Source: Macrostomum lignano
Lineage: Eukaryota
Length of the DNA: 64,000 bases
Direction: 5' to 3'
Assembly: GCA_002269645.1 (NCBI GenBank)
Contig: NIVC01001402.1
Coordinates: forward strand, 62,001 to 126,000
Shown: piece by piece, positions 1,979 to 27,149 of the stretch
Numbering within the stretch: position 1 is the stretch's first letter
Layout: the number at the start of each line of letters is the position of its first letter
The notes under the pieces: generated by a model
Told to the model about the DNA's origin: nothing
What the model saw: only the letters and a program-made list of their open reading frames with translations
Database searches by the model: none
Program-made: the position numbers and the translations under genes

Positions 1979-4799
1979 AGTTTATTTGACTTAAAGTTTA
2001 ATGTATAATGTATATGGTAAAACTAGATACGTAAAAGTAGGATAAAACAAAGCAAAACAAACAGTTAAAAAGATGTTTTAATCTTAAGTTGAAAAAAACC
2101 GCTAAAACAATTCTGACCATATATAGTGGCTGTTTTTGTGTTGCTAAAATACTTTTGTAGTATTTAAAGTAGTATTTTATTTTCAAATGCAAGTAAAAGT
2201 AAAAATCACAAAAGAATTTGTTTTAGTTTTTGAATATAAAGTGTATAATGCAAAGTTTGATGTCAGTTACAAACGATATTTTTTGTGTTTTTTTTACGTA
2301 CGGTCTATGAATTCGCGTCTTTTAACTAGAGTCTAGCGATAAAGTTAGTTATTCGCTATAAACACTAAAATGCAGAAATGCTGACCAATAGAATTCCTTA
2401 ATATCTTTATACATCTTTCATATTTTGTCTTTATGTAATTAAAATAAGCATATTTTACTTTAAACCCGCAACTGTTCTATTGAGCACAAATTTGTTTCTT
2501 GTTTGATCGCTTGTGTTATAATGGTGCAATCGCTTTTTTAAGTTTTCGCCAAATTGCGAAAAGTTTATTGGTCGGTTAACAGTTATTAGAAGATTGTAAT
2601 GTGAACTGGAAATATCTCTTCTATAAGCAAATATTCTACCAATTATCTACCAATATTCAACCAATAATAAACAAATTTAGTCATTGTTCAAAACATCGAT
2701 TACACTTACATTTTAAGCTTAGTCATAGTCATAAGCCTATGCTTGGGCAGTATAAGAGTTATAACGAATTCGATATTGCACGTCTGTCCACTAAGTCTAA
2801 ATAATGATAAAAATTAGCTTGTGCCTTAGCTTAGTTTAGCTCGTGAATATCTTTATAATTAGGCCTAATTCCCTGTGTAATTTTGTACACGATTATTGTT
2901 ATCTTTGAGGAGGCCTCTTTTGTATTTATTATTATTTTTTGCCTCTGTATAGGCCCCCCTAGCAGTATAGAGGATTAGGCGCCTATTTCATTTGTCTTTT
3001 TCTTTTAAGCCAATCCCAAATTTAGAAAAAACAGCTAGTCTTATGCCCTACATGAATTCATTTGATACAGTCAAGTTTAGGAAATATTGTGTATATATGC
3101 CATATGATATAGGCCCCTATTATTAGTTAAGCAATAAGACCCCTTATTTTTCTATTTATTTTTAAAAATAACTATGATAGATTGATAGGATGCCATGGAG
3201 AGACGGGCTTTGCTTTGCCTTATTAAATCCCATTATTAAGCTACCAAAGTTGTAATAAGGCTCTCTGTCCTGTCCTAAGAAATTTTATAAATGCTACCAT
3301 TAAGCCAATAATATCTTATCTAGGATTATCTTCTAATTGCAATGTAATATATTGATACTTTTAATATTATATCTAGCATACACATGCAACCCCTTGATTT
3401 ACATTGGCTATGCAACTTATTTTTTGACCAAAAATGTGACTTAACTATAAAAAACCCTAGTTATAGCTATAGTCTAATTACATTTGACCCCAAATATATC
3501 ATTTTAAAGGCAAAAAATGATATTCTCATTTGTTTTTTTTTGAAAAACCAATCATACTTTGCATTAATCTCTACATATAAAAATCAAAACTTTGTCTGTG
3601 TGTGTGTGTGTGTGTGTACAATTTTGATCGCTATGGACTCCCAAACTGCTCAACCAAATGACACCAAACTTTACACCCACCCTAAACTTACTACGAAGAA
3701 TGTCTTTGGCTACCTTTTAATTTCCTAGAGTTAAGTTCCTACCTAAAAGTATAAAAAACTGCTCAAAATGTGTGATTTTTTCACTTAATCCTCCATAGTG
3801 CCACTCTACTTCTACCGATTCTGTTCAAATTTGACAGTTGACACAGATAATCTTTAACTATTTTGGCACAACCCCACAATCATGTAAAATTTTGAGTCTC
3901 AAAGTTAATCCTAAGCGGTGCTGTGCACTTTTAAAGTTAGGCTGTTTTTTTCAGCATAGCACCCACCCCAACCTCCGCCTGCCTACCTCTCTTTCCGGAT
4001 CTGGGCCTGGATGTGTAAAAGGGTTTCAAAATTGACTAACTTTCAGCTGCCATAAGTTTGCTCCACGTATAGTGATTGACTTCAAACTTGACACAATTCT
4101 TCATTGACTCACTCTCTGTCTAAATATAAAGTTTCAACTCTGTAACTCAACCGAAAAAGAAACTGTAAGCATATGAAGTTTGTCTGCTTTTTCTGTTGGT
4201 TGTGCCACTCACTCACTCATTCCCCCAGAGCCAGACGAAGGGTCAGGCAATAGGACTGAATGTACATAGCAAATGTACAGTGTTTTGGAATAACTTTATT
4301 TATAGCCTTCTCTGCACCCCAAGAGTGGAGAGGCTACGTTTAGCCATGACAATTTAGTGAGAAATTCTAACCACTGCCCTCTGTATTGGCAAACTCTGCA
4401 GCAGTTTAACAGTGGATGGCAATTGGCAAATCGAGGGAATCCACTATCCAGCATGGTTTGTAAAAGTGAAAGATTTATGAAAAGGTGATGCGATGCAATG
4501 CAATACAACCCTACTAAATTAGGCATACCATGGAAATTTTAGGTTTCTTGTAAAGGTACTGTGTAAATTTTAAATGGCCTCCTAAGAAATGCATATTTCC
4601 TTGGTTGTTAGACTGATGCAGACTGCAGTGGAGCTGAAGATACACAAATTCCTTTCAGGGCTGCAAATTGGCAAGAAAGATGACATGATCAAAGCATGAG
4701 AACAACCATGAGAGTACTACGTCCCACAAACTGGCTTTCCAAGCAGGGATGGGTAGACTTTCACTTTAAAGGCCAGATAAAGAATCCAGCTCATAGCTG

Positions 4800-5408
4800 A
4801 GGAGCAGATTAAAGTGAAAGAAGAAGGAATAGACAATTCAAAGAGAGGAGAGGCGACAAAGGGGATAAAAGAAAAGTTAAAAGATAATAGAAGAGATGAG
4901 GGGGTGAGGACAATGAGAGAGAGGGGGAGAAGATGGGAGAGAGGAAAAGCGAGAGGAGAGAGTAGAGATAAGAGAGCAGAGAGCTGCAGATGAGAGGAGA
5001 GAGGAGACAGCAGAGAGGAGAGCAGAGAGGAAACAGGTGAAAGAAGAGATGAGAGAGTAAAGAGAAGAGAAAAGAGATAAAGATACATCTCTACATCTCT
5101 AAGGTTCTAGAGATGAGAGAGGTGGAAGGAGAGATAAGAGATAACAGAGAGAGGAGAGTGGAGTGAGAGAAGAGAGGGAGACAGAGTATAGAAAAGGGAA
5201 GAGAAAAAAAGAAAGGAGAAAGGAAAGTGAGGAGTCAAAAGAGGGGAAAGAAAAGAGTACAGAGGAGAGAGGTAAGAGAACATATAAGACAGAGATGCCA
5301 GATTAAAGAGGGGGGTAAGAGAGCAGAGACTCAGAGCAGAGAGAGCAGAGAGAACAGATAAAAGATGGGAGAGTAGAAAGAACAGAGGAGAGGTTACAGA
5401 GACGAGAG

Positions 5409-5475
<67 letters not shown>

Positions 5476-6060
5476 GAGCAGAGAGAAATAAGAAGAGATA
5501 AGAGATAAAAGATAAAAGAAGAGAAAGGAATGATGAGAGAGCAAAGACGAGAGAGAAAAGAGGTGAAGGAAGAGATGAGAGAAGAGGGGAGAGATGAGAG
5601 AGTAAAGGAGAGAGGAAAGGGGGAGAGAGGAGAAAGGAGAAGAGAGAGAAAATGAAAAAGTAGAGAGGAGAAAGGAGAGGAGAGAGAAACAAAGAGACAA
5701 GAGATGAGATAAGAGAGATGAAAGAGAAGAGAGATGAGGGAAGATACGAGAGAAGAGGGGAGAGATGAGAGAGTAGAGGAGAGAGTTAAGAGAAGAAAGA
5801 AAAGAATAGAAAGGAGAAGGAAGATAAGAGAGAAAAGGGGGTAAGAAGAGAAAAGAGAGGGGTAGAGAGGAGAGAGGAGAGGAGAGAGAAAAGAAGAGAC
5901 AAGAGATGAGATAAGAGAGATGAAAGAGAAGAGAGATGAGGGAAGATACAAGAGAAGAGGGGAGAGAGGAGAGAGGAGAGAGAGACAAGGGACAAGAGAG
6001 ATGAGAGGAAACAAAGAGACGATAGAAATTTTAAAGGATCCAAGGGACGTAGGGAGAGTC
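4800..6060. repeat. Purine-rich GA low-complexity tract with a pure (GA)n core (~5416-5472) and internal duplications
   Basis: Almost only A/G on the + strand; the block gagacaagagatgagataagagagatgaaagagaag recurs near 5693 and 5896. It produces the spurious S/L/F/P-rich ORFs. Confidence 0.95.
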
Positions 6061-7879: not shown

Positions 7880-8010
7880 TCCTTTTGCAACTTACCTGAT
7901 CCTTTTTGTGACTTAGTTGCTCTTGTTGCAACTTACCTGATCCTTTTTGCAACTTAGTTGCTCTTGTTGCAACTTACCTGATCCTTTTTGCAACTTAGTT
8001 TGCTTCTTTT
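7880..8010. repeat. 41-bp tandem repeat, ~3 copies
   Basis: cttacctgatcctttttg at 7891, 7932 and 7973. Confidence 0.85.
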
Positions 8011-9214: not shown

Positions 9215-12200
9215 ATGGACTACAGCGGAGCTGACAGCAGTTTTACTGCCGATATGGCAGAGGGCGGCGCCTCAGCCACCATCAACATGGAGAAGCTGCA
9301 CCGTATCCAGGCCACCATCCCTGTGCAGGATCCCAATGCGCCACTGGGATCCAATAAAAATCCTATTAGAATCATTCAGCAGGGCAATCGATTTATTACT
9401 ACGCAGAACCTGAGCGAGGAGCAGCTTAGCCAGATCACCCAGGTGAGAAATATTGGCCTGTTCACCTGTCTGTCTATAAACATGATGATGTACCATGTGG
9501 TGCTCATGGCATCCTAAGTACAATTATTAAGTAGGTGAAAGTGAGCCCAGGACCTGCCTGTAATGCCAACTGCCAAGCAATCGAGGGAAATGGAATGTGC
9601 AGTGCCTACTTGTTCGCTTCAACACTACTGTAGCCCGTAGTTGGTTATTTAAGTATGACGCGCTTTTCCTTACATACAATGGCAATTGTTAACCTTACAG
9701 GTGAAGATACTTTAATGTTTAAAGCAGGGATCGGCAGACTCCGGTCCGCTCAGGGTATGTGTCTCTTCTTAGCTCTCTCTTTCTCCTCTTCCGTCCTCTC
9801 CACTCAAATCTCTATCCCTCTCCCCTCTCCTCTCCTCCCCTTCTATTTTCTCGCCTTTCCACTTTCATCTGGCCGGCAGCCATGAGCTGAATTCTGTATC
9901 TGTACTAGGGGTAAAAAAATTTGCCGACCCCTGCTTTAAAGCAATAAGACACTTGCTCTGGACTGGGAGCCAGGTTCCAGGTAGTGAGTGGCTTTCTTAG
10001 AATCTGCGAATGAAGTTACCGAGATAGGCAGACACTTTATGGTCTGGCGTGATTCCTTGACTGCGATCCCCAAGCTTATCTATAATATTTTGATGTGAGC
10101 TGTTTTTGCGCCCGTCGCAGGTGCTGCACAACCAGTCCATCATGAGCGAGGTGCAAAAGCCGTCGGGCACCCCCGCCGCTTCCGCCGGCCGCGCCGGCCT
10201 CAGCCCGAACTCGAAGTCGCTGCTCCGCGACCTGGACAACACCGGCGCCAGCCCGGCTGGCGTGAAGCGGCGCCGCGGCAAGCGCCTGCCGGAGGAGGAG
10301 GACCCGGACTTTGATCCCATCGCCGAGGAGGAGGGCCGCAAGCCGGGCCGCTACCTGTACCCTGACGACTCCATCATCTTCCAGTGCGACCGCTGCGACC
10401 TGCAGTTCATGTCGCGCCAGGCGCTGCTCAAACACGTGCAGCTGCGCCACGAGCAGCGCGACGCCCGGCGAACCCAGTACGTGCCGGTGCGAAAGCGCAG
10501 CGCATTGAAATCGGCGGTGAAGACCAGCACGGATGAGGAGCTGGTGGACATCTGCCTGCCCCGACTGGCTAAGCTGGCTAATCCGTTCGACTTCCTTCTT
10601 GTGAAGTCGGAGCGCGGCGACCCGCCGCTGCCCAATTTGGCCATGCTGGTTGACGACCTGGTGAGTCTTGCGTATTTTGGAGCGAATTTCACAAGGTTGT
10701 CAGCGGCGACATCCTCGGCATTCAAGACGGTCTTGTCGAGCTTCTTGGCATTGGGCCGTTTTCTAAGATTATTAGGAAACTTAGTATTGTAAATGCAAAT
10801 CCAATTAGTATTGTGAAAATTGTCAGAATTCACAGAAGGCGCAAGGCGCATGCAGTGAAATTCTTGTCTGTGGCCTGTGGCTCGCTCAAAGCCTTCATCT
10901 TGCTTCTCGCTGCCAACCCTAACTGAGCTGCTCTCTCCGCTATTCTCAGGTGAATCTGGTCGACATCAGCCGGAAATTCCTCAAGGAGCACCTGGTGCGA
11001 ATTCCGGCTGGCGAGCCGCGCCCACTCGGCTCAGTGTGCATCGACAGTCAGGCCAAGGCCGACATCCTTGGCGTGGAGGCAGGCAGCTACACCGTGCGGC
11101 CCACCTTCAACGAGGGCTACCTGCCTCCCAGGCACCGCGCCTCACTGCAGTCCCGCCGCGGCCCGGGCGCCGCCGCTGCCGCCGTGTCGCAGGCGCAGCA
11201 GGACTTGGCTGGCGGCCAGGCCAGCCGCTTCGCCACTCTGCAGCCGCACCCGGTTGAACCTGACGTTGTCACTAGCGTCGGCGGCTCCGGTGTGCAGACG
11301 GACACCAGCGCCGGCAGTTTCAGCATGAAGATCGGCCCGAAGTCCACCCAGATCCGCCAGCAGTCGCAGAGGCAGCCGGCCATCACCGACAAGGACATCG
11401 CTGTTGAGCGATACTATCAGGTGAGCCGCTGGCTGTACTAATTGAGCTGAGATCAGTTGACCATCGTGGATCCAGAGCTCTTAGATTTGAAATGCCTGAA
11501 AAATGAAGATTTGTGATCTGTGAACTGTGCACTGGGAGAAGAGATAAGAAGGACATGCAGGCACTTGCTATAGGATAGGATGGGGCGCACAGACACTGGA
11601 GTTTAGATGGTGTGCACAGGCATTATTACTAATACTCGTATAAGTAAGCGGCATATAGACTGTGAAGTTCGTTGAGATTAGAGGGACATGAAAAGATACT
11701 CGTAGCCTGTGCGGATGAGGACATCCATTGCACGGCCCTGCCATTGTGAGCGAATCATTGAATATCTTCAATGAATGCCGCAAGTGCTCAAGCATCTCTG
11801 TTGATCGCCGCCCACAGGTGCTGGACGAGAACGGCCAGCCGTCAGACTTCGTGATCGAGGTGGCCACCGGACAGTTCTTCAACCGCATCACTGGCGAGCA
11901 GATCGCCGTGATGCAGGAGTCGGCAGACTTGGCTGAGCAGCCCGCTGGCGCCGTCACCCTGGCCGCCACCTCGTCTGCAGGTGCCGTGACGGTCACTGGA
12001 GTTTCTGGTGCCTCGCCTTCGAAAGCTTCGGCCGGCGAGGGTTCCGCCGCCACCGCAGCTGAGGAAGTTTCGTCGGATGTTGCTGCTGCAGCGAAGCCAG
12101 GCGCCGGAGCCGCGGAGGATGCCGCCGACAAGAATGGTGCGGTGGACGGAGCTTCGGAGGCCAAGGCGGCAGTTGGCGGCGGCGACAATGCTCAGGCCGC

Positions 12201-12492
12201 CGCTTCCGGTGCCAATGCCGAGCAGCCGACTGAAGGTGAGGCTGCGGCGGCGGCCCCGGAGGCAGCAGTGGACGGGCAGCATGCGGCGGTGGCGTCCGCG
12301 GTGGCTGCCGACACGGGCGAAGCCGTGCAGATCGACCTGAGCGCCATGTTCCCCGGGGTGACCCTGCAGGATCTGGATGACACCGTGCTGCTCATCACCA
12401 AGCCTGACGGCTCCACTCTGCAGGTTGAGCACGGAGGCCAGGGCATCACGCTAGAGTTTCTGCAGGAGCTGCTCAACACCCAGTTCGACTGA
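9215..12492 (+). CDS. C2H2 zinc-finger protein, ~637 aa; exons 9215-9442, 10121-10660, 10950-11420, 11818-12492
   Basis: Four GC-rich exons joined in phase 0 by CAG|GTGAG...CAG introns; one C2H2 motif FQCDRCDLQFMSRQALLKHVQLRH, a basic KRRRGKR patch and an acidic/Ala-rich C-terminus. Confidence 0.82.
9725..9933. mobile_element. hAT (Charlie-like) MITE in intron 1 of the zinc-finger gene
   Basis: TIRs CAGGGATCGGCA / TGCCGACCCCTG; 8-bp flanks GTTTAAAG and CTTTAAAG (7/8 identical TSD); 209 bp, non-coding. Confidence 0.8.
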
Positions 12493-13274
12493 GTTCTCCC
12501 CTGTCCTTGACTCAGTCAAATCACCTGCAACTGTTGCTTGATTATCTCGTGTGCGCTGAACTTCGCATCCCGGATGCGTTCGCAGTTCCAACTGGCACTC
12601 CATTTGTCTGTGTAATTCACTTGGCATTTTGCTCATCCAGCGAACCTGTGCGCTCTGTTTCTAGGGTCTCCCCGTACTCGCGGCTTCTGCAACCAGTTGG
12701 AAATTTATCAGGTATTCGATTGGTTCGTGTAAGTTGATTTGTACATAAGCGCGAGTGTGAACTTTAATTAAAGAGCGGTTATTTATTGCGTCATCTTTTT
12801 CTCCATTTCCTGCTTACTCTTGCTAGAGGCCGGAGCCTTTGTCCGCACCTGTCTGGCTAAATATTTCTGCTCTTTGTCATTTACGGTTTTTAGTCTCCAT
12901 CCTGGCCTGTCGCTGCTAAGTAGGACACCATGTACTTACATTCATATGCAATACTACTGTATAATGTTACTAATTTCTGTAATCCCTAGCGAAACTCATA
13001 TTGTATGCGTGCCCTGCTCTATGATATATTCGAATGCATAAGTAAACTAATGCAAGGCCTGCAAGTACGTTTCTGTTGGTTTTATCCCTATATACTGTTT
13101 CATTTTGTAGACATAAATGCCTATGTAATAGTGTTTATAAATACATTAGCTTTTCAAGTTAATCTATTATGTATGTACAGAATTGACTGCTATTGCTTCT
13201 ATTAAATCTGCTGCCGAAATTGGTCGTCATTGCCGCTGTTTCACGAGATGTTCAGTTGCTTAGACTATATTGTA

Positions 13275-13930
13275 TACCCACATCCTGTTCCCTGTATCCT
13301 TAGCAACCCCACATAATGTTCCCTGTGCCCTTAGCAACCCCACATAATGTTCCCTGTGCCCTTAGCAACCCCACATAATGTTCCCTGTGCCCTTAGCAAC
13401 CCCACATAATGTTCCCTGTGCCCTTAGCAACCCCACATAATGTTCCCTGTGCCCTTAGCAACCCCACATAATGTTCCCTGTGCCCTTAGCAACCCCACAT
13501 AATGTTCCCTGTGCCCTTAGCAACCCCACATAATGTTCCCTGTGCCCTTAGCAACCCCACCTCCTGTTCCCTGTCTCTTTAGCAACCCCACATCCTGTTC
13601 CCTGTGTTCTTAGCAACCCCACATCATGTTCCCTGTGCCCTTAGCAACCCCACATCCTGTTCCCTGTGTTCTTAGCAACCCCACATCATGTTCCCTGTGC
13701 CCTTAGCAACCCCACATCCTGTTCCCTGTGTTCTTAGCAACCCCACATCATGTTCCCTCTGCCCTTAGCAACCCCACATAATGTTCCCTGTGCCCTTAGC
13801 AACCCCACATCCTGTTCCCTGTGTCCTTAGCAACCTTGCATCCTGTTCTCTGTGTCCTTAGTAACCCCAAATCATGTTCCTTGTGTCCTTAGCAACCTCA
13901 CATCCTGTTGAACTTAGCAACTCCTAATGA
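13275..13930. repeat. 31-bp minisatellite (cttagcaaccccacataatgttccctgtgcc)n
   Basis: tagcaacccc at 13301, 13332 and onward; about 20 copies, degenerating at the 3' end. Confidence 0.95.
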
Positions 13931-14122
13931 ACTTAGCAACGCACCCCTATTAGACTGTTTCCAGTAATCCTAGCAGCAACACATCCTCTTTCCAGTGCCT
14001 TAGCAACGGCACACTTTGTCCCAAGTGTCATTAGAGCAACTGATCCCGCAGCGCATATTAACTTGCCGCACCCACCCGATGCTCTCGACTCCCTACTGAA
14101 GCAGCCCCAGTCCAGCCCAGCC

Positions 14123-14656
14123 ATGCTAAACGCGGCCGCAGATTTCCTGGCCGCCTACGGCTGGCCTCTCCTCATCGGAGTCTGCGCTGCCGCTTTCATC
14201 TACTCGCGCTACGTTCGGCCCGCGGCAGCCGCTGCCGCCCAGCGCGCCCGCGCCGCCGCCGCCAAGCGGTCGGACTCGGCGGCTGACAGCGAGGAGTTCG
14301 CAGCCAGACAGGCCCGCGTTGCCGAGGCCCGCGAGAGACAGCTCCGCCAGCTGCAGCTGGATGCAGAGCAGCGGGCGGCCAAGCAGGTGGAGGCCACCGC
14401 TGCCAACAGCGCCTCAGCCTCTGCCGGCTACGTGCCTGGCCAGCCCGGCCGCAATCGCCGCTCGCTGCTGAAGTACACTGGCGACGAGACCGACGCCGTC
14501 TCCGCCGCTCAGCAGCGGCGCAATGCCTCTAAAGGCGGCAGCGGCGGCGGCAAGCGACGCCTTCGCGATGAGTACAACCCGCTGGTCGGCGACTCGGGAG
14601 CGGCGGCCCGCTACCGCCCGCCGCCCTGCACCAGTGCGGGTGGCGGATGAGGCTAA
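14123..14656 (+). CDS. SELENOS: Selenoprotein S (SelS/VIMP); in-frame UGA at 14648-14650 inferred to be selenocysteine, true stop TAA at 14654-14656
   Basis: FLAAYGWPLL TM segment, a coiled-coil, then KRRLRDEYNPLVGDSGAAARYRP...GGG-TGA-GGC-TAA, parallel to human SELENOS (LLATYGW ... LRGGGYNPLSGEGG ... GGUG*). A SECIS-like element lies ~450 nt downstream. An upstream exon or start codon is not excluded. Confidence 0.9.
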
Positions 14657-15082
14657 CTGCGCCTCCCAGCTGGGAATGGCCGCCCCTTGCTCGCCAGAGG
14701 CTTTGAAAGGGGTGGCATTCCGCTGCAGGCCGGGCCCGGACCGAATGCCGGGTTACGGCCTCGTCAGTTGGCTGGCGCGGTTAAATGGAGTTTTTGAACT
14801 TGTATGTCCCAATTAGTGCGTAACTGAACTCTGGTACAATACAGCCTTAGCAGTGAGGACTGCCGAGTGGGGGATCAATGCTAGCGTTAAACGCGAAATA
14901 TTTCAAAGAATTCGATTCAGACTCGAGTGGCAGACAAGCGGTTGGTTGAGTTGGAAAGTTTTAGGGGAGTTTTGACACTACCTCAGCACTTATGAGTTGA
15001 TTTGCCCCCTTGGCATATACTACTGCTAGGGCAATCTAAAGTACAGCCCCTATGATACCGTTGTCTTCCCCCCATCGCGGAC

Positions 15083-15190
15083 CCGGGCCGGTGGCCAGAA
15101 TGAAGCGGCCCGGCGCAAAGCCGCCCAGTTGGAAGCCCGGGCCTCGCTGATCGATGCTCGCCCAGTGAGCTGACGGCCATCGGGCCAGGG
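15083..15190 (+). promoter_or_regulatory. SECIS element in the SelS 3' UTR
   Basis: ATGAA (15100-15104) and TGAT (15148-15151) form the tandem G.A core; helix GCGGCCCGG / CCGGGC(CT)CGC; apical AAA at 15117-15119, 13 nt after ATGA; lower stem ccggtggcc / ggccatcgg. Confidence 0.82.
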
Positions 15191-15632
15191 TCTGCGCTTT
15201 CTCTGTTCCAAATGCTTTTTGTTCTGTGATGCTTTCTCTGCCTGATGTGCGGCTGTATTTGGACAGGTGTTTGAGCCATTTTTTAGTCTTTGATTTTTTA
15301 TCTGTCTCCAGGATTTCATTGCACTGGTTCTGTGTTTTTTAATCATTTTATTTCGGTTTCAGTGACGCTTCTATCAGATGCTATTCAGCGACTGTGCCGC
15401 AGCAGCTCTCACTGCCCATTGAGGGCTGAGCTGCTCGCACAGAGTATGCATTGCCAAGCATGTTTGCATTGCTATTATACACATGCCTTGCTTTGCCTTC
15501 AACTCTGTTAATATGTGCTTTTTCGACTTGCTTTTTATTTGATATCGAATTCACTGATAGCCTAGGCTTTTTACCTTATAAATAACAAGCAGGCTCCAGA
15601 CTCCAGTATAGCATCATCAACTCACACCAGCT

Positions 15633-15719
15633 ATGATGAGCTCATACATCGGCGTCGGGCGGAATGACTCAATCTGGCTTGTAAAACAGCCGGGCCCTGA
15701 TATTGCCAGTCGATTCTGA
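15633..15719 (+). ncRNA. Box C/D snoRNA, copy 1
   Basis: Box C ATGATGA (15633), D'-like ATGA, C'-like TGATAT, box D CTGA (15716-15719); terminal stem cacacc/ggtgtg. Confidence 0.8.
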
Positions 15720-15848
15720 GCGGGTGTGATTTTTTAGATGATTAAACCTGACGGTAATGGGAAGGTTAGACAGGTTCTAAGTTCAGACTCTTGTGTTCCT
15801 CTACTGCTTAGGTCTGTGAGATATTTGAATTCCTGCATCGCACCAGCC

Positions 15849-15936
15849 GTGATGAGCTCCTATATCGGCGTCGGGCGGAATGACTCAATCTGGCTTGTAA
15901 AACAGCCGGGCCCTGATATTGCCAGTCGATTCTGAG
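15849..15936 (+). ncRNA. Box C/D snoRNA, copy 2
   Basis: GTGATGA...ATCGGCGTCGGGCGGAATGA...CTGATATTGCCAGTCGATTCTGA; near-identical to copy 1. Confidence 0.8.
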
Positions 15937-16070
15937 CGGGTGTGATTTTAAAGATAATTAAGCCTGGCGGTAGTAGTCAGGTCAAACAGGTTCTCTAAGT
16001 TCAGACTCTTGTGTTTCCTCTGCTGCGTAGGTCTGCGAGTTAATGTTTGAATTCCTGCATCGCACCAGCC

Positions 16071-16151
16071 GTGATGAGCTCCCATATCGGCGTCGGGCGG
16101 AATGAAGCTAGCAGCTTCAAAAGTTGCTCTGATATTGCCAGTCGATTCTGA
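16071..16151 (+). ncRNA. Box C/D snoRNA, copy 3
   Basis: Same boxes and guide segments; different central loop. Confidence 0.8.
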
Positions 16152-16225
16152 GCCTGTGCGAATTATTCACTACAAGTAGTATAAGCCGCTTTTTTGTAAA
16201 TATATGCATAGTCACTCAAGCTCAA

Positions 16226-16301
16226 ATGATGAGGCAAATATCGGCGTCGGGCGGAATGAATCCAGCTTCAATGCTGACCTGATATTGCCAGTCGATTCTG
16301 A
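16226..16301 (+). ncRNA. Box C/D snoRNA, copy 4
   Basis: ATGATGA...same two invariant segments...CTGA; divergent loop and flanks. Confidence 0.8.
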
Positions 16302-16406
16302 TGCGCTTTTGTTGATAGGGATCAATTCCTGATTGATTATTCATGTTCACTTGTTCAATCTCAGTAAGTCTCCCCTCCCCCAAATTCTGTTACAGCCAGC
16401 CGCTTG

Positions 16407-16883
16407 ATGAAGCTTGAGTTGTGCAGCTTCTCCGGATTCAAGGTGTACCCCGGCCGCGGCCGCTGGCTGATCCGCACCGACGGCAAGACCTTCCACTTCC
16501 TAAATTCGAAGTGCGAGCGCTCCCACTTCCAGAAGAAAAATCCACGCGAGGTCAGCTGGACTGTGCTGTACCGGCGCAAGCACAAGAAGGGCCAGGTGGA
16601 AGAGGCCGCGAAGAAGAAGTCGCGCAAGTCGCACAAGGCCATCCGGGCGGTGGCCGGCCTGTCCATGGCCGACCTCATGGCCAAGCGCAACCAGAAGCCG
16701 GAGTTCCGCAAGGCCCAGCGAGAGCAGGCGGTCCGCAACGCCAAGGAGAAGGCCAAGGCCAAGGAGGCCGAGAAGAAGGCGCAGAAGCAAGCAGAGGCCA
16801 AGCAGTCCCGCCCCGCCGGCCAGAAGCAGAAGGCGGCCAAGGTCATGAAGCCCACCGCGCCACGGGTTGGCGGCAAGCGCTAA
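16407..16883 (+). CDS. RPL24: 60S ribosomal protein L24 (eL24), intronless CDS
   Basis: [19 protein letters not shown]...[14 protein letters not shown]...[18 protein letters not shown]...PRVGGKR; AG acceptor (ttacag) 11 nt before the ATG. Confidence 0.97.
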
Positions 16884-17809
16884 TTGAGACTCAATTATCC
16901 AGTCCGAGTTCCCCTTCGCCATTTGTTTCCCCACCACTCCAGTAGCCATTGTTGACGCGTTGCTTTTGCCTAATGTGATCTGGTAATATGAGGAGATTGT
17001 GAGAAAAAGAAATAATTAACCACTGGAACTAAAATTGCTTGCTGCCGTTTGCTTTCAACAGTTTTTGTTTTTTTGTTTTTCTCGGCTGAAGAATTAATTA
17101 CACCTTACTTCGCTACGCTAAAGAGCTTACGCTAAAGAGATTTAGCGGACGATCTGTTTTCTAAAAAAAAGAGAGCAAAAAGTGATCCTTCATTTTTGGC
17201 TGCTGTGTGACGAGTACTACTGGGGAAGTGTTGTTCGAAGGCTTATACGCTTTTACGTTTGCAAAAATTCACATTCTCGAGGTCAGGTAAATCTATGGTA
17301 CGAGGTACTAGCAATCATCACCACCCGTTGGGGAGCCAACAAACAATGGAATAATTTTTTTCATGAACTACATGAGGTTTCTGACCTCAGACTTGTTGGC
17401 ATCTCAGCCATTCTGAATCCCGCAAGTCTTGATATCTCAGCAATGATTGAACATACTTAATAGTAGAATTATAGCAATCTACAGCACATATAATAAACCC
17501 GGCACCGGCATTCTGAAGATCTAGTGTAAATTTACATGCGCTCATTGTGCACAATTACTAAATAGTGAGGTAAACCAAATTTGCGACTGTTGCTTGTAAA
17601 TGCACACTTCTTTCAAAACTTATCAGAAAAGATCCGCATAGAAAATCGTCCCGATAAGGAAAACTTTTACTAGGCCCTATCTTGTAGAAGCTTGGATGAC
17701 AATTGATCGATGTCGCGCAATTGGAAACAGTTGGTTCCTTCATAATCATTCGTTTGGAGTATACTCTATTGAAAGCTGTTGTCAGTTTGCGTTGATGGGT
17801 GTTACACAG

Positions 17810-20263
17810 CACCCGACGACAACCGGCTAGCCGGGCCAAAAGCTTACAAAATCATCGGGCTAACCGGCAGGAAAGCGCGCTTTCGAGCTCTCGCTTCTCC
17901 CGGCTAGACGGGCCCAAAGCGCGCTCCCATACAATCAAATGGGAGTGTATCAATTGAAAGCTTTTAACGGGTGTTTAATAACAATTTGCAGTATAAAAAT
18001 CGACGTTTGTTAATATTAATTCGCTTGCATGTAATTTGAAAACAAAATTTACAGGAATGAGCTAGGGTTCCTGTGTTCAACGTTCAACAAAAGCTTTTAA
18101 GGCATATTTGTTGTGCTACTGTGCATTGCTGTGCTGGCCTATGCACTAGACTAAACAAGTGAAGGCTTCGTGTACAAGATAAATGAAAGGAGCTTTTCTG
18201 AAATTTCTTGTGCATTATTATGTTATTGCTTAAGTAATTTTGTTCTATAGTTTAAGCTTGTCACGTGTTAGTTAATTAATAATACAGGCATTTGAAATAT
18301 AAATGTAGGTCTAATATTTTGAGAAGTAACTTATAAGCTGCTTTTATTCAATTATAAAAAGGCTTCAATTCAATTAAATTCTATTTATTTAGCTATAGCC
18401 CTATGTATGTAGGAAAGCCTATTGAGCACTAAGCCTGGGCCTAGCTTATTGACTGACTTGGTCTTAATGAATAGATTTAGCTAACTTACTAGATAAGAGC
18501 CTTAAAATTTTTGTTTTTTCTATCTATCTACTTTATGTATACCAATAGGCCTAGACTAAATAGCAAACTATAAAACTAAGCCTACAATATTTTATATCAA
18601 ATACCTGATGTTTGACTTATTTTCCTTTCCTTAGTTCCCCTCTCCCCTAACCTTGGATTTCCTCCTTCTAACCCTGGCTTCCCTTCCTTGACCTTGGCTT
18701 CCCTCCCCCTGACCCTGGCTTCTCTCCTTACTGACCCTGGTTTCTCTCCTCCCCTGACCTTGGCTTCTCTCCTCCCCTGACCTTGGCTTCCTTCCCCTAA
18801 CCCTGGCTTCTCTCCCCTTGACCCTGGCTTCTCTCCACTTGGCCCTGGCTTCTGTCCCCCTGACCCTGGCTTCCCTTCCCTGATCCTGGCTTCTCTCATC
18901 CCCTGACCCTGGCTTCTCTCCTCCCGTGACCCTGGCTTCTCTCCTTCCGTGACCCTGGCTTTTCTGTGCCTGGCCCTGGCTTCTCTCTCCCTGACCCTGG
19001 CTTCCCTCTCTTGACCCTAGTTTCTCTCCCCCTGACCCTTGCTTCTCTCCGCCTGGCCTGGCTTTTCTCCTTACTGCTGACCCCTGGCTTCTCTCTCCCT
19101 GACCCTGGCTTCCCTCCCCTGACCCTCGCTTCCCTGCCCTGACCCTGGCTTCCCTCCCCTGATCCTGGCTTCTCTCCCGCTGGCCTTGGCTTCCCTCCCT
19201 TGACCTTGGCTTCTCTCCCCAGACCCTCGCTTCCTTCCCCTGACCCTGGCTTCCCTCCACCTGGCCCTGGCTTCTCTCCCCCTGACCCTGGCTTCCCTCC
19301 CTTGACTCTAGCTTTTCTCCCCCTGACCCTGGCTTCTCTCCGCCTGGCCTTGGCTTCCCTCCCTTGACCCTGGCTTCACTCCCCTGACCCTGGCTTCTCT
19401 CCGCCTGGCCTGGCTTTTCTCCTTACTGACCCCTAGCTTCTCTCTCCCTGACCCTGGCTTCCCTCCCCTGACCCTGTCTTCTCTCCTCCCCTGACCCTGG
19501 CTTCTCTCTTTACTGACCCTGGCTTCCCTCTCTTGACCCTAGCTTCTCCCCCCCTGACCCTGGCTTCCCTCCACCTGGCCTGGCTTCTCTCCTTACTGAT
19601 CCCTGGCTTCTCTCTCCCTGACCCTGGCTTCCCTCCCCTTACCCTGGCTTCTCTCCTTACTGACCCCTGGCTTCTCTCTCCCTAACCCTGACTTCCCTCC
19701 CCTGACCCTGGCTTCTCTCCCCTGACCCTGGCTTCTCTCCTCCCCTGGCCCTGGCTTCTCTCCCCTGACCCTGGCTTCCCTCCCCTGACCCTGGCTTCTC
19801 TCCTCCCCTGACTCTGGCTTCCCTCCCCTGACCCTGGCTTCCCTCCCTCTTGACCCCTGGATTCCCTCCCTCCTGACCCCTGTTTCCTTCCCTCTTGACC
19901 CATGGCTCCCTCTCTTGTTCGCCCATGGCCCTCCTTCTCCCATGGCTCGCTCCCTTCTTTTTTAAACATCTCTCCTGACCCCTCTTGACCCGTAACTTCT
20001 GCCCTGCTCTGCCCTCTTGCTCTGACGTCTGCTGTCTGCTCTACCTTGCTCCTTTGCCCCCTGCTTTTCTGTCCTCTGGTTTTCTGCCCCCTGCTCTGCC
20101 CCCGCTGCTTTGCTCCCTGCTGTCTGCTCTACCCTGCTTCTCCGCCCTCTGCTAAAGTAGTCTCGTATTAGTACCAAGCAGCACAGCTTATTGAAAGCAC
20201 ATTCTTCCTTCAGAAAAAGCTACCGGTGAAGCCCAGCTGCTGTCCCATTGGCACCTTTGCTTT
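17810..20263 (+). repeat. Left TIR arm, with internal (ctgaccctggcttc...) sub-repeat array at ~18650-19900
   Basis: Reverse complement of 27150-29821; identical 100-aa spurious ORFs at 18597-18899(-) and 28732-29034(+). Confidence 0.92.
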
Positions 20264-22258
20264 TGCCTCTGGTGCGATTGGCCTAGCAACAAACAAGCAG
20301 CTGTTCACCCACAAAAGCTATCCAAGCGCGAGCTTTCTACTATGTGTGCACACTGAGCTGAAATTAGTTTGTACGTACCGCCACTATGAGTTCTGATACG
20401 CTGACATCTGGTGCAACCGTTACGGCCGGGTCTGCCGCTGGTTCCGCTTAAGCAGCCGCCTCAAACATCGCTGCTGCAGCCGAAACTGAAGCTGGCTCCG
20501 CCAAAGCTATTTTTTAATTCGACAATTCTTTTAACATTTAGATCACCGAATTCTGTTAATACATGTTCAGATCTTGTAAAGCTCAACAAAAGCACCCATT
20601 TGTCATCGCCCTTTTCCAATATTGCTACTCGCATTACTCCCTGTGCAATGGGAGCCACACTCAATGTTTTTGGTGTCGTGTTTTTAGGTTGTTTATGGGT
20701 GGATTTTCTATTTGTAAAAGCATTTTTCGAGTCAATGCAGTTTGTAACATCGGAGTATCATATATTTTTGCTGTGATTTCTGGGAGACATTTTTTCGAGA
20801 CGATACTGCTCTGTGACAGGGTGGTGTTCAACGTGTGCCATTTTAATTCAATCCTTGATCACAAAGCTCGGAGCAAGTGCCCCTAGACTTCAGTGTCAGG
20901 CTTTCAGTTTAAGCAAATAATCCAAAATAATTTCGGCTGTACCATTGTGGACCAACAATGACCAACCCCTTATACTGTCAAAATCCTGTTGTTTTTACAG
21001 GTTCTTATATTTCTACTAGGAACTGACAGGTGTCTTTTGTTGTTACCGCCAGTTATTTTTTTAAACATTACTGCTCTTCATGAAGATGCGTGCAAAAAAT
21101 ACAGATATAAACTTTCATGTTACATACAGTTATGACCAGGAGCTTTCCGATTTTAGTTGGTCATATAATTTTGTCGAAAACTTGGTTTTGTGTTTCTGGA
21201 GTATTTCTTAAATAGCATGCGCTCCGCAAAATTTTGTTGATTTAGCTTTACACTCCAGAAGTAAAATTTTCTCAGTGAACTCACATTTTATTTCGCTCTT
21301 AGTGGTGCAGCTTAAGCATGTTTCGAATGCTCCCAGCAAGCTGCCGAGAGTTCCTGCACTGGCAAGAAAGGACGCTGCCTGTTAATGGTGTCTTAGTAAA
21401 AGTGCTCAAGAGAGAAATCTTCATGCGATTCTGATGAGCGCTCACCCTGGTGGGCCATGGGTATTCCGGCTATAGTGGTTGCATGGAGCAAACCTGAGGC
21501 AGGGGTCTAGCAAGGAAGACTCACTTATTGTGTATTAAAAATTTACGCATATTCATACATGTAGGGTCGAATTGGGCTTCAGCAACGCAGGGGAAGCGGC
21601 AAAATAAGGGCGGGGGCTCGCAGCAGTCTACTGATTCAGTCGGACTGCTAGTCTGGGGAGCTGTCAAAACAGCCGATGCGCGGTGCACCACTGCACCAGC
21701 TGCCGATGCTGCTTCAGTCGCCTACCAACCTGTTCGCGCTGCCAGGAGCGAACTACAAATTAAGTTTTTCCGCTCGATCCAAGTCATGTGACGAAACCCA
21801 GGGGCTGCCTGAGAATATCTGTGTAAACCTCTGGGCTCTAGCGCTGAAAATTACCAGCCGCCATGCATGCCTCACATGGACTTCTCCACCTCTGGATGCT
21901 GTTTTGTAGCTGACGTTGCGGTCAAGTTTCAATTATCTCGACAGCGCGGGCCCGGGTTGTTTGTTTGCCGAAGGGCGTGGCCGCCTCTGCAGTCACTTGT
22001 GTAGGAGTACACCCGAAAAACTCGACACTACTAGAAATGGCACGTACATTTACATGTAACACTCTAATGGACTCTATTCGAGGAGGCATACAAGGGACGG
22101 TTTACTTGTAATCAGTGCTGGAAATGAGGAATTTAAAGACTTTTGCATAAGGGGGATCTTTAGTTGGTGGGCGACTCTATAGGAAATGAAGCTGGGGTTC
22201 CCGGCGGGGACCGCGGTGGTTCGGTCTCGCGGGAAAACAAACAATAATTAAAACAAAT

Positions 22259-22560
22259 TTGTATCACCGCGCCGGCCTGGTGCGTCCAAGCGACCTGTTG
22301 CGCCGTCGGCGACTCCAGCTGGCAGGCCACATCATCCGCGCCGAGTCGTACTGGCCAAAGCCGGTGCAGGAGGTGCTGCTGCTGACGCTGCAGGCACCGG
22401 CCCTACCGGCGGGGACAGGCGCGCACTCGGCGTTTCGACTCGACTAGCTGCCTGCTGGCTGATGCTGGCGCCCCGGAGCCGGCGGCGTGGCGTTCATTCG
22501 CAACCTGGCCTTGAGGCGCGCCGTGTGACGCTGACTGCGTATTCTGTTGTTGTTGTTCTG
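22259..22560 (+). mobile_element. 3' fragment of a non-LTR retrotransposon (RTE-like C-terminus) with a (TTG)n tail
   Basis: YHRAGLVRPSDLLRRRRLQLAGHIIRAE...; closely similar to the reverse complement of 44720-44960; ends ctgttgttgttgtt. Confidence 0.75.
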
Positions 22561-23834
22561 GTACGTGGCGCGGCTATGCCTTTTGGCGTGTACCTATAAA
22601 AAACCCGGATCAGCCGCTAGTTTTGTTCAGGGGAGCTTGACCACTAATCAAGCATACACTATCAACAGCCGAGAGTGTTCAACTAAATTACAGCAGGATG
22701 CATACTATAGAGAGCGAGTTCTAGGGAGTCTTCACTGGAATCAGTGTGTAATCGCAATTGTACTTCTTCGTACGTACGTATGGTCAAGTCACTTGGCTAT
22801 TATTCTGTTACATGTAATTTCTAGCTCATGTAACTGTATAAATGATGCATGGGATGTACGTATATGATACATGTGTAGATCACAGTTTGTGTGTTCCACA
22901 AGTCATAAATAATGTTACCAATATGGCATGATAAACATGGCCATGTACATGTATGCGCCTTATTGTAGGTAGAAACTGTGTTCAGGTATATTCTATTGTA
23001 TGTCAATACATTTTGCACTTACATGTATAGTCGTAGAGTTCACGTCCTGGAAAGCAATTACTCGTAGCACATGTGCATGAAGCTGTGATTCTTATTTTAA
23101 AGAAGATTCTTAACCAAATTTCTAAACAGTCCAGAGGTGCACGCACTAAATTCAGGGAACGGCAGGAGTCGCATGCGGACGTCCGTTCTGTCTTCCGTGT
23201 ACTTCTACATGTACGTATATAAGAAATTCCATTGAAGCCATTCAGAATCGCTTCCGTACTTTATTGGTGCTCTCCCAAGTGCTAATGACACCTCCTCGCT
23301 ACGCCCCAACATTGGCACCTACACAGAACACACTAACACCTAACCTCATCTTTTAATGAGTTGCATAGCGCTATGCGTGATGAAGTACTGTACGAGTAAC
23401 GCAAGTTACTATCGATAATAATCTCAAAATTCTATCCCTTTTGTAACAGCCCGAAATAGATGAACTCGATCCAATATATCGACGAGCTACAGTGTATAGT
23501 GCATGTGTATCGATTTATACCACTTTCTAGAATGTATCCTATTGTACACCACACCACTCAGCACCCAACACACCACCTTACTCAATGCAGGTACATTATA
23601 TCGCAGAAGTCACATAAGCGCTGGAAGAAATATTTATTAAATTGTTAGAAATCGACAGTAACTCGTACATGTACAAGGGTACATACGTAATTGTATGTGG
23701 CGCTTTCATCAATAAGGCTTTTTAGCATGTCTTAGTTTTTTAAACAAACGAACTAAAACAAGTTTATTAGAGCATACTTAAGGTCTTAAAAATAGCGTCA
23801 CACAGCTATATTCCCCTAGTACAGGAAGTTCCCA

Positions 23835-24300
23835 AAGCACTTCTCTGGCTAGAGTTGGCGCTAGAGGAACTCGCTAAGATGGGATTCAAAAATGGTCACT
23901 AGCGCCATGCTGGCTGCAAAACTTCGCCTTCACGAGTGCCCAGGTGCCTTCGATGTTGTTTGTGGGCACAGTTGGATCGTTCGGATCAACGAAATGCAGA
24001 CGGTGATTGAAAAACACCTGGGGAAGCGCACTATATACCTGCCAGCCGTCAGTTAAAATGCGTGTCCCAGGCAACACACTGCTGAATAATCTGACTCAGC
24101 AGACCGGTTGGGTACTTGTACCATCATGCATTTGCGTGTACCTTGCTCGACCATCCCAAGCACCCAGTGGCCCTCGCGGTAAGCTCCCTGGTGGTATTTG
24201 CGATGAAAAAAATGGACTCATCCACTTCAACTTCTCTTCCTTTTATTGGCTTTTTTATTATTGCAAGCAAAAAAGAACAATTATTTCTCAGTTTTCGTAC
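23835..24300 (-). pseudogene. Decayed Merlin (IS1595/ISXO2-like DDE) transposase
   Basis: Across frameshifts: VEVDES..RKYHQG..GHWVLGMVE..LPGTRILTDGWQVY..NHRLHFVDPND..TNNIEGTW..EFL*R, the ISXO2/Merlin motif order. Confidence 0.8.
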
Positions 24301-24614
24301 AACATATCCTTTATTTTTTTCTCGCTTATCGCACATTCCATTGTCAGCTGCTAGTATTTTCTCTGTCGTTTGTCAAAAAATGGCACAATTCAGGTACACT
24401 AAATGGCACACTATAATAAAAAACGAGAAAAGAACACGGACAATTCGATTTAACAATTCCACAAGACTTAGCAACAGCCGCAAAAACCAACGTACCACGA
24501 CGTGAACACCTACAAGTCAACTTATGATTTTTTGACCAAAATATAAAATATGCAGAAGGTACAAGTGGTCAGTTCAGCCACACTGTTAGAGCGCGACGAC
24601 AGTACTTTGGTCAA

Positions 24615-26715: not shown

Positions 26716-27149
26716 CCTCGCCTCTGCCAAAATTAGATATGGCTTGTCAATGCATGGCTTTTGTGTTATGGCTATTGGTGATTTGTGAAACCTCACTAAC
26801 GGTGATCGGAAGTACTAATGCATGTATATGTGCATGCATAGAGTACATGAGAAAGAAACTAACAAGTTATGGATAAAAGTAGAGCAAGGGTAAAAGGTAC
26901 AGATAAACAAAGTTAAAAAATTGACTGTAAATAAAGCTAACATGAACTGTCAATGATACGAATTTCCATTTGCTGACAGCTCAAGACAAAATGCTTTCAA
27001 CGACCGTTCCATTCTGAGCTAACTTTGATACGATCACCGCATTGCTGAAGGTTATGGTACGCTTTGCACCGACTGTAGCGTTCGAGGCGGCTGTTCGAGC
27101 AGAACCAGCGGCAGTCCCGGCCGCAGCAGCGTTGTTCGAGACGGTGACC

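What the first reader, a model, noticed from the sequence alone, without database searches (positions are those of the whole stretch)
14123..15190. Hidden selenoprotein: SelS with a UGA-encoded Sec and a bona fide SECIS
The ORF track stops at TGA 14648, but the sequence is GGG-TGA-GGC-TAA, the exact ...GGUG* terminus of SELENOS. A SECIS with an AUGAA/UGAU core, a GC-rich helix II and an apical AAA lies ~450 nt downstream. Automated annotation would truncate the catalytic residue. The human CxxxxxxxxxxxxxU partner Cys is replaced by a Cys only 7 residues before the Sec (CTSAGGGU), implying a different redox-loop geometry (inference). Selenoproteomes vary among flatworms, so an intact SelS/SECIS is informative.
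Basis: partly seen in the sequence, partly recalled or inferred. Interest (0 to 1): 0.75.

Follow-up and report, generated by a model that had tools for sequence, protein, structure and literature searches.

The report
Flatworm selenoprotein S gene, mis-annotated
This is an ordinary but intact selenoprotein S gene of the flatworm Macrostomum lignano whose selenocysteine codon (TGA) the public annotation reads as a stop, so the finding is correct but is a new member of a well-known family.

Summary
An intronless ORF (ATG 14123) runs to GGT-GGC-GGA-TGA(14648)-GGC-TAA(14654). It passes the Pfam Selenoprotein_S threshold (49.7 bits, cut-off 29.8) right to the last profile position. Seven independent SelS mRNAs or genes (shrew, tick, five invertebrate transcripts) end in the same GGN-TGA-GGN-TAR arrangement.

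A SECIS-shaped element lies 450 nt downstream. It has AUGAA at 15100, 12 helix II pairs, an apical AAA at 15117, a 3-bp ministem and UGAU at 15148. It is the only hit of a consensus SECIS scan in all 128 kb of both strands. Only 2 of 1000 dinucleotide shuffles of the 3'UTR gave a hit.

Rfam SECIS_1 does not score it, but it also misses the shrew SelS SECIS, so that negative says little.

The window is M. lignano GCA_002269645.1 contig NIVC01001402.1.

The Cys at -7 (C169/U176) is real. However, the Cys position varies widely across SelS (-14, -7, -5, or none), so it is not special.

Two things are new here. A very stable 125-nt fold starts right after the stop codon (z = -5). A colinear second copy in the same assembly carries a nonsense codon.

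Verdict: a new member of a known kind, of low to moderate interest.

The parts
14123..14656 (+). Full SelS coding sequence: 175 codons, Sec codon, Gly codon, TAA. It gives a 177-aa protein ending ...PPPCTSAGGG-U-G.
   Evidence: The public gene model covers 14111-14650 only.
14144..14203 (+). Hydrophobic membrane segment FLAAYGWPLLIGVCAAAFIY (residues 8-27). It contains the family-invariant Trp14.
   Evidence: Alignment A1: W14 invariant, G13 nearly invariant.
14306..14338 (+). Stretch resembling the p97/VCP-interacting motif: R62-QARVA-E68-A69-RE-R72 (RX5[E]AX2R).
   Evidence: R70 and R72 are invariant in A1. The motif consensus is from my own knowledge of human SELENOS. The first Ala of the AA pair is Glu here, and Leu in some other invertebrates.
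14573..14620 (+). Conserved C-terminal motif YNPLVG...RYRP (residues 151-166).
   Evidence: N152, P153, L154, G156, R165 and P166 are invariant in A1.
14627..14629 (+). Cys169 codon (TGC), 7 residues before Sec. It is a candidate resolving Cys.
   Evidence: The same spacing occurs in P0006. The position varies in the family.
14648..14650 (+). In-frame TGA read as selenocysteine 176. It is followed by GGC (Gly177) and TAA.
14657..14781 (+). Very stable structured domain starting at the first nucleotide of the 3'UTR: an outer 7-bp clamp enclosing two long hairpins. It is a candidate UGA-proximal recoding enhancer, like SL1 of human SelS.
   Evidence: MFE -77.7 kcal/mol, z = -4.97, 0 of 300 shuffles as stable. 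Also. The function is inferred.
15082..15190 (+). Whole SECIS region including the long-range helix I (15082-15096 with 15175-15190) and a small hairpin (about 15156-15170) just 3' of the core.
15100..15151 (+). SECIS core to core. AUGA 15100-15103. Helix II 15104-15116 with 15135-15148 (12 pairs, a 1-nt and a 2-nt bulge). Unpaired AAA 15117-15119. Ministem 15121-15123 with 15130-15132 (type 2 form). UGAU 15148-15151.
   Evidence: Recovered core to core, ranked second in the window, by a covariance model built only from other SelS SECIS elements.

Best explanation
The locus is the intact selenoprotein S (SELENOS/VIMP) gene of Macrostomum lignano.

The mRNA encodes a 177-residue tail-disordered ER-membrane protein. 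Its penultimate residue is selenocysteine, encoded by UGA 14648-14650. A type-2 SECIS in the 3'UTR (core 15100-15151) would recruit SBP2, eEFSec and Sec-tRNA, so that the ribosome inserts Sec, adds one Gly and stops at UAA 14654.

If recoding fails, a 175-aa product ending in -GGG is released. In mammals such a product is removed by Gly-end C-degron ligases.

By homology the protein should recruit p97/VCP through its R-x5-xA-x2-R helix, and use the C-terminal Sec, possibly with Cys169, as a reductase centre.

Shown here: family membership, the conserved UGA-Gly-stop ending, the SECIS fold and its statistical rarity, and truncation in the public annotation.

Inferred: actual Sec insertion, the extent of the 3'UTR, the Cys169-Sec176 bond, and any enhancer role for the 14657-14781 fold.
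For: Family:
- Pfam Selenoprotein_S scores 49.7 bits (cut-off 29.8) over profile positions 29-192 of 192.
- The exhaustive HMMER search gives 12 SelS homologues. Most end ...GG(G) at the residue aligned to query position 175.
- Sources name several of them selenoprotein S.

Sec codon:
- DNA of seven orthologues (L002, L004, L007, L009, L010, L011 Ixodes, L012 shrew) reads GGN TGA GGN TAA/TAG, the same as the window.

SECIS:
- It is the sole strict hit in 128 kb, and 2 of 1000 shuffles give a hit.
- The SECIS-constrained fold is isoenergetic with the MFE.
- The core matches the published UGAN/KGAW consensus, and 450 nt exceeds the 51-111 nt minimum UGA-SECIS distance (PMC3753652).
- A covariance model built only from six other SelS SECIS elements recovers exactly 15100-15151 as the second-best hit in the window.
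- No AATAAA or ATTAAA lies between the stop and the SECIS.

Comparison with the second copy:
- The window copy keeps the ancestral states (open frame, Gly after Sec, paired helix II). The colinear second copy L001 has a nonsense codon, Gly to Ser after Sec, and a C.A mismatch in helix II.

Literature:
- SelS is a selenoprotein in the free-living flatworm Schmidtea and is lost in parasitic flatworms (PMC3828610).
Against: - Rfam SECIS_1 gives no hit at E<=10, even on 116 nt. The same model also misses the shrew, L007 and L010 SelS SECIS elements and scores L002 at only 18.5 bits against a cut-off of 35.
- My own covariance model gives only 12.3 bits, E = 2.3 for the whole window.
- Overall folding energy of 15060-15190 is not unusual for its composition (z = -0.54).
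- Helix II has a 2-nt bulge near the core. Helix I is either long-range with an inserted hairpin, or short.
- No transcript, ribosome-profiling or protein evidence was available, so the 3'UTR end is not mapped.
- The scanner criteria were written after the candidate had been seen.
Confidence: 0.88

Rival explanations
1. The TGA is a plain stop. M. lignano would then make a Sec-less 175-aa SelS, and the downstream SECIS-like hairpin would be a coincidence of GC-rich sequence.
For: The public annotation ends the gene there. Rfam SECIS_1 is silent. The region's folding energy is not exceptional. Human SelS also has a SECIS-less transcript that yields the truncated protein (PMC3628699).
Against: The TGA-GGN-stop arrangement matches seven orthologues exactly. 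The SECIS pattern is unique in 128 kb and occurs in 0.2% of shuffles. Known Sec-less SelS forms, such as those of psyllids, replace Sec with Cys rather than stopping.
Confidence: 0.05
2. The window copy is a silent or decaying duplicate like its partner copy. It is intact by sequence but no longer expressed as a selenoprotein.
For: The colinear copy L001 (93-95% identical over 10 kb) has CAG to TAG at the position equivalent to 14510, 8 nonsynonymous against 5 synonymous differences, and a broken helix II pair. This shows that one copy can be lost.
Against: The window copy has no defect. At each position I could polarise against outgroups (Gly after Sec, the open frame), the window copy keeps the conserved state, and it also keeps the helix II base pair that L001 breaks. 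A public gene model exists for it, which I believe, from my own knowledge, to be transcript-derived.
Confidence: 0.06

Closest known systems
Human and other vertebrate SELENOS (VIMP); shrew orthologue P0009 / L012
   Same: Pfam family. YGW membrane segment. AR.R helix. YNPL.G...RP motif. Gly-rich tail ending GG-U-G-stop. Type-2 SECIS with AUGA / AAA / GA. A stable stem-loop at the very start of the 3'UTR.
   Different: Only about 27% identity. It lacks the 30-45 N-terminal residues before the membrane segment. The central K/E-rich coiled coil with the W..H..G.GY motif is replaced by an Ala/Ser-rich stretch. The Cys is at -7 instead of -14. The gene is intronless, whereas the shrew gene spans 4.2 kb.
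Schmidtea mediterranea SelS (PMC3828610)
   Same: A free-living flatworm with a Sec-containing SelS. This fits the pattern that free-living flatworms keep SelS while parasitic ones lost it.
   Different: M. lignano belongs to a different, early-branching flatworm order (my own knowledge).
SL1 of the human SelS 3'UTR (Bubenik et al. 2013, PMC3628699)
   Same: The structure begins within 1-3 nt of the stop codon and is far more stable than shuffled sequence. It is also seen in shrew L012 and in transcript L010.
   Different: Here it is a 125-nt two-hairpin domain rather than a single hairpin of about 40 nt. Four other invertebrate SelS mRNAs lack any such structure. The function is untested.
Psyllid Cys-form SelS (P0010, P0028, P0031-P0034)
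   Same: Same family and same C-terminal motif, with a nearby partner Cys (C-SRGG-C).
   Different: Those have Cys in place of Sec and run on past it. The window has TGA.

Membership tests
Selenoprotein S (SELENOS, Pfam PF06936) | Sequence match to the family profile above the curated threshold | tested here: met
   49.7 bits against a cut-off of 29.8, E = 5.4e-13, profile positions 29-192 of 192.
Selenoprotein S (SELENOS, Pfam PF06936) | N-terminal hydrophobic membrane segment with the YGW motif | tested here: met
   W14 invariant and G13 nearly invariant in A1. The segment is FLAAYGWPLLIGVCAAAFIY.
Selenoprotein S (SELENOS, Pfam PF06936) | p97/VCP-interacting motif RX5AAX2R (consensus from my own knowledge) | tested here: inconclusive
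   R62-x5-E68-A69-x2-R72. R70 and R72 are invariant columns. The first Ala is Glu. Binding was not tested.
Selenoprotein S (SELENOS, Pfam PF06936) | Gly-rich C-terminus with penultimate Sec: GG-UGA-Gly-stop | tested here: met
   GGT GGC GGA TGA GGC TAA. The layout is identical in 7 orthologues.
Selenoprotein S (SELENOS, Pfam PF06936) | Partner Cys 14 residues before Sec (human Cys174/Sec188) | tested here: not met
   The Cys is at -7 (C169). This feature is not conserved in the family, so it does not define membership.
Selenoprotein S (SELENOS, Pfam PF06936) | Selenocysteine actually inserted | not testable with these tools
   Needs 75Se labelling, mass spectrometry or ribosome profiling.
Eukaryotic SECIS element (type 2) | Kink-turn quartet: 5' AUGA(N) and 3' (K)GA(W) placed so that the G.A/A.G pairs are tandem | tested here: met
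   AUGAA 15100-15104 and UGAU 15148-15151. The consensus is from PMC3753652.
Eukaryotic SECIS element (type 2) | Helix II of about 9-14 bp above the quartet, followed by unpaired AA(R) | tested here: met
   12 pairs counting A15104-U15148, with bulges of 1 and 2 nt. AAA 15117-15119 comes 13 nt after the quartet.
Eukaryotic SECIS element (type 2) | Additional ministem beyond the AAR bulge | tested here: met
   CCG 15121-15123 pairs with UGG 15130-15132. L001 changes U15130 to C, turning a G-U pair into G-C.
Eukaryotic SECIS element (type 2) | Helix I below the internal loop | tested here: met
   A 14-pair long-range helix (15082-15096 with 15175-15190) appears in the MFE. A shorter alternative appears in the 81-nt fold. 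The geometry is atypical because a hairpin is inserted on the 3' side.
Eukaryotic SECIS element (type 2) | Match to a curated covariance model | tested here: inconclusive
   Rfam SECIS_1 gives no hit. The controls show that the model also misses the shrew, L007 and L010 SelS SECIS elements. My own model R1 gives 12.3 bits, rank 2 of 128 kb, E = 2.3. SECISearch3 was not available.
Eukaryotic SECIS element (type 2) | Lies in the 3'UTR of the same mRNA, at least about 51-111 nt from the UGA | tested here: inconclusive
   It lies 450 nt downstream on the same strand, with no canonical poly(A) signal in between. The 3' end of the transcript is not mapped.

The most novel reading that the evidence does not exclude
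M. lignano SelS could be a stripped-down variant in three respects. It has no N-terminal segment. It may have a compact Cys169-x6-Sec176 selenylsulfide loop in place of the 13-residue vertebrate loop. Its Sec insertion may be boosted by an unusually large (125-nt) UGA-adjacent RNA domain, which would mean the SL1-type recoding enhancer of SelS predates the split of flatworms and vertebrates. The nonsense-bearing second copy would then show a selenoprotein gene being lost after the recent genome duplication of this species.
Probability: 0.25. Interest if true: 0.4.

Novelty: new member of a known kind. Interest (0 to 1): 0.3.

Why it matters
The main value is a correction to annotation. The public M. 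lignano gene model (window 14111-14650) lacks the catalytic selenocysteine and carries no family assignment on record. M. lignano is a regeneration and stem-cell model, so a correct selenoproteome matters for redox and ER-stress work in it. The result also adds an early-branching free-living flatworm to the pattern that free-living flatworms keep SelS while parasites lose it (PMC3828610). The structured domain right after the UGA offers a cheap cross-phylum test of whether SelS-type proximal stem-loops are ancient recoding enhancers. None of this changes what is known about how selenoproteins work.

Tried and rejected
- Rfam release 15 on 13900-15800 and on 15070-15185 gave no SECIS family hit. 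Controls on real SelS mRNAs showed the model is insensitive to SelS SECIS elements, so I did not count this against the element.
- MAFFT alignment of six SelS SECIS elements with flanks (A2) put the 3' cores out of register and was discarded.
- The core-to-core alignment A3 gave a weak 7-pair model R1. It finds the element, but not significantly.
- The PDB sequence search gave no meaningful hit.
- Exact look-up of the 175-aa product and of Styela P0002 found nothing. The 179-aa form starting at 14111 was found.
- The profile search A1 was capped at 8000 candidates. It returned mostly crustacean and psyllid SelS and no further flatworms, so I could not test whether the -7 Cys is typical of flatworms.
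- The supplements of PMC3753652 and PMC3828610 are not held. I therefore had neither the exact SECISearch patterns nor the Schmidtea SelS sequence.
- ARAGORN found no tRNA in the 83-nt insertion of L001.
- Comparing conservation of the SECIS with the rest of the UTR between the two copies is uninformative, because everything is about 97% identical.
- I considered an upstream coding exon and judged it unlikely. Both gene models (window 14111, L001 5001) start immediately after an AG, 12 nt before the ATG, which fits a trans-splice acceptor. This is inference.

Full report
**What is in the sequence.**
On the + strand an ORF starts at ATG 14123 and runs without interruption to GGT GGC GGA (14639-14647). 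Then come TGA 14648-14650, GGC 14651-14653 and TAA 14654-14656. The peptide ending ...CTSAGGG-[TGA]-G-stop is as described. The region is GC-rich (about 70%) within a window of mixed composition.

**Which organism and record.**
The closest database protein is a 133-aa 'hypothetical protein BOX15_Mlig002776g1, partial' of Macrostomum lignano, 97% identical. A look-up of the 179-aa translation starting at 14111 found an identical public gene on GCA_002269645.1 contig NIVC01001402.1. The 4540 bases fetched are identical to window 12111-16650. The window is therefore M. lignano. Its public gene model spans 14111-14650, is 5'-partial, has no Pfam hit on record, and ends at the TGA.

**Is it selenoprotein S?**
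- Pfam Selenoprotein_S (PF06936) matches at 49.7 bits (curated cut-off 29.8), covering protein residues 5-175 and profile positions 29-192 of 192, that is, to the end of the family model.
- An exhaustive HMMER scan of 1.84 billion representatives returned 12 distant homologues at 21-34% identity.
- Sources name several of them selenoprotein S (Styela clava, Suncus etruscus, a psyllid). A profile search added shrimp, crayfish and psyllid SelS.
- In the alignment the window protein has every invariant column: W14 in the YGW membrane segment, R70 and R72 in the AR.R helix, N152-P153-L154-G156 and R165-P166 in the YNPL.G...YRP motif.
- It differs in three ways. The 30-45 residues that other SelS carry before the membrane segment are absent. 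The central region is Ala/Ser-rich instead of the K/E-rich coiled coil. The stretch resembling the VCP-binding motif reads R62-x5-E-A-x2-R72.
- Both M. lignano gene models begin immediately after an AG, 12 nt upstream of the ATG. This fits a trans-splice acceptor and ATG 14123 as the true start. That is inference.

**Is the TGA a Sec codon?**
Most homologous database proteins stop at ...GG(G), exactly at the column aligned to the window's residue 175. I fetched DNA for seven of them: five RNA-seq contigs, the Ixodes hexagonus gene and the shrew gene. All read GGN TGA GGN TAA/TAG, meaning a TGA, one Gly codon, then a second in-frame stop. The window has the same arrangement. Cys-form relatives (psyllids) have ...GGCG.. 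at this place. This conservation of a 'stop' plus one codon plus another stop across phyla is the signature of the SelS Sec codon.

**The SECIS.**
- The core runs from 15100 to 15151: AUGA-A, a 12-pair helix II (A15104-U15148, then 15105-15116 with 15135-15147, with a 1-nt and a 2-nt bulge), unpaired AAA 15117-15119, a 3-bp ministem (15121-15123 with 15130-15132), and UGAU 15148-15151.
- This matches the published core consensus UGAN/KGAW with apical adenines. At 450 nt from the UGA it is well above the 51-111 nt functional minimum (PMC3753652).
- The 81-nt stretch 15085-15165 folds into the SECIS shape without constraints. In the 131-nt context the SECIS-constrained fold is within 0.2 kcal/mol of the MFE.
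- Overall stability is not unusual for such GC-rich sequence (z = -0.54), so the argument rests on motif geometry.
- A scanner implementing the consensus found this site as the only hit in both strands of the whole window. It remained the only + strand hit, and the best by bp and energy, under relaxed rules. It hit in 2 of 1000 dinucleotide shuffles of the 3'UTR and 0 of 1000 shuffles of the local GC-rich block. The scanner was written after the candidate had been seen.
- Rfam SECIS_1 does not report the element at E<=10. As controls I ran Rfam on real SelS mRNAs. It scored L002 at 18.5 bits (cut-off 35) and missed L007, L010 and the shrew gene entirely. Recognisable SECIS elements are present in those sequences, so the Rfam negative is uninformative.
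- A small covariance model built only from six other SelS SECIS elements (A3, R1) recovered 15100-15151 core to core as the second-best hit in 128 kb. The score was only 12.3 bits (E = 2.3), so this is weak support.
- No AATAAA or ATTAAA occurs between the stop and the SECIS. The nearest signals are TATAAA at 15577 and ATTAAA at 15741.

**The second copy.**
Contig NIVC01000868.1 (L001) is colinear with the window over about 10 kb at 93-95% identity and carries a second SelS copy. Relative to the window it has:
- CAG to TAG at the position equivalent to 14510;
- 8 nonsynonymous against 5 synonymous differences, including Asp to Asn just before the YNPL motif and Gly to Ser after the Sec codon;
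- an 83-nt insertion in the 3'UTR;
- in the SECIS, one change that strengthens the ministem (G-U to G-C) and one that breaks a helix II pair (C-G to C.A).

Where I could polarise the difference against the orthologues (the open frame, Gly after Sec), the window copy keeps the conserved state. The window copy therefore looks functional, and L001 looks like a decaying duplicate or null allele.

**The Cys.**
Across SelS the nearest Cys sits at:
- -14 in the shrew and decapod crustaceans, and about -13 in one further transcript (P0030);
- -7 in the window and in one unidentified transcript (P0006, ...CGPSGGG-U);
- -5 in psyllid Cys-forms;
- nowhere in Styela, Ixodes and several other invertebrates.

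A short-loop selenylsulfide is possible, but the position is evolutionarily labile. It is weak ground for a claim of special geometry.

**An additional feature.**
The first 125 nt of the 3'UTR (14657-14781) fold into a clamp enclosing two long hairpins, at -77.7 kcal/mol. Shuffles average -58.1 +/- 3.9, giving z = -4.97, and 0 of 300 shuffles are as stable.
- The L001 copy keeps the fold (z = -4.06). Of six substitutions, three fall in unpaired positions and one converts G-U to G-C. This is suggestive only.
- The shrew gene shows the known SL1 hairpin (z = -3.3 in the first 50 nt), and transcript L010 has a comparable domain (z = -4.9).
- L002, L007, L009 and Ixodes have none, and L004 shows only a weak signal over its first 50-80 nt that is gone at 125 nt.
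- In human SelS a stem-loop starting 3 nt into the 3'UTR promotes Sec insertion (PMC3628699). A similar role here is a reasonable hypothesis but is untested.

**How it most likely works.**
The SECIS recruits the Sec-insertion machinery, UGA 14648 is decoded as Sec, and Gly177 and UAA follow. Failure gives a -GGG-ended 175-aa product. In mammals truncated SELENOS is cleared by Gly-end degron ligases (PMC7090344). Whether this applies in flatworms is unknown. By homology the protein is an ER-membrane adaptor for p97/VCP with a C-terminal Sec redox centre (PMC3628699 abstract, and my own knowledge).

**Novelty and verdict.**
SelS is a long-known selenoprotein and has been reported as a selenoprotein in the free-living flatworm Schmidtea mediterranea, with loss in parasitic flatworms (PMC3828610). 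No paper in the held library describes the M. lignano selenoproteome. This is a correct and well-supported call of a mis-annotated member of a known family. It comes with two modest extras: the UGA-proximal structured domain and the decaying duplicate. Confidence that this is a Sec-encoding SelS gene with a functional SECIS is about 0.88. Interest is about 0.3.

Noticed in passing
L001:5001-6130 (GCA_002269645.1 NIVC01000868.1), equivalent to window 14111-15160: A second, colinear SelS copy in the same assembly. It has a premature TAG (window-equivalent 14510), Gly to Ser after the Sec codon, a broken helix II pair in its SECIS, and 8 nonsynonymous against 5 synonymous differences. It is probably a decaying duplicate or null allele.
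   Followed up: partly
L001:5883-5965, inserted at window-equivalent 14992: An 83-nt insertion in the 3'UTR of the second copy that is absent from the window. ARAGORN finds no tRNA in it, and its origin was not identified.
   Followed up: partly
window 13277-13909: A 31-bp tandem repeat array (20.4 copies, 91% matches, unit CCCACATCATGTTCCCTGTGCCCTTAGCAAC) about 200 bp upstream of the SelS start. It is also present in the L001 copy.
   Followed up: no
window 15625-16153: A 216-bp tandem repeat (2.4 copies, 87% matches) just beyond the SelS 3'UTR. The ATTAAA at 15741 lies within it.
   Followed up: no
window 17803-29827: About 12 kb present in the window but absent between the matching flanks of L001 (L001 9530 to 9535). 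It is a large insertion/deletion difference between the two colinear regions.
   Followed up: no
window 4001-6000, 18001-20000, 24001-26000: 2-kb blocks with extreme strand skews (GC skew +0.52, -0.42 and -0.55, with AT skews of +0.46, -0.41 and -0.18), suggesting low-complexity or satellite sequence.
   Followed up: no
window 12111-12492 and about 16400-16870: Neighbouring genes. The 3' end of a DUF4764-like gene lies upstream. By colinearity with L001 7362-7823, a ribosomal protein L24e gene lies downstream on the same strand. This leaves about 1.7 kb for the SelS 3'UTR.
   Followed up: partly
L002:1069-1113: The SelS transcript L002 has a SECIS-like element that Rfam SECIS_1 scores at 18.5 bits. 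Its 3' core reads UAAU instead of UGAU in this RNA-seq contig. This could be a non-canonical core, a polymorphism or an assembly error.
   Followed up: no
window 56110-56144 (- strand): The top hit of my weak SECIS covariance model (12.8 bits, E = 1.7): AUGAA...CGAU around a short hairpin. It is not picked up by the consensus scanner and is probably chance.
   Followed up: no
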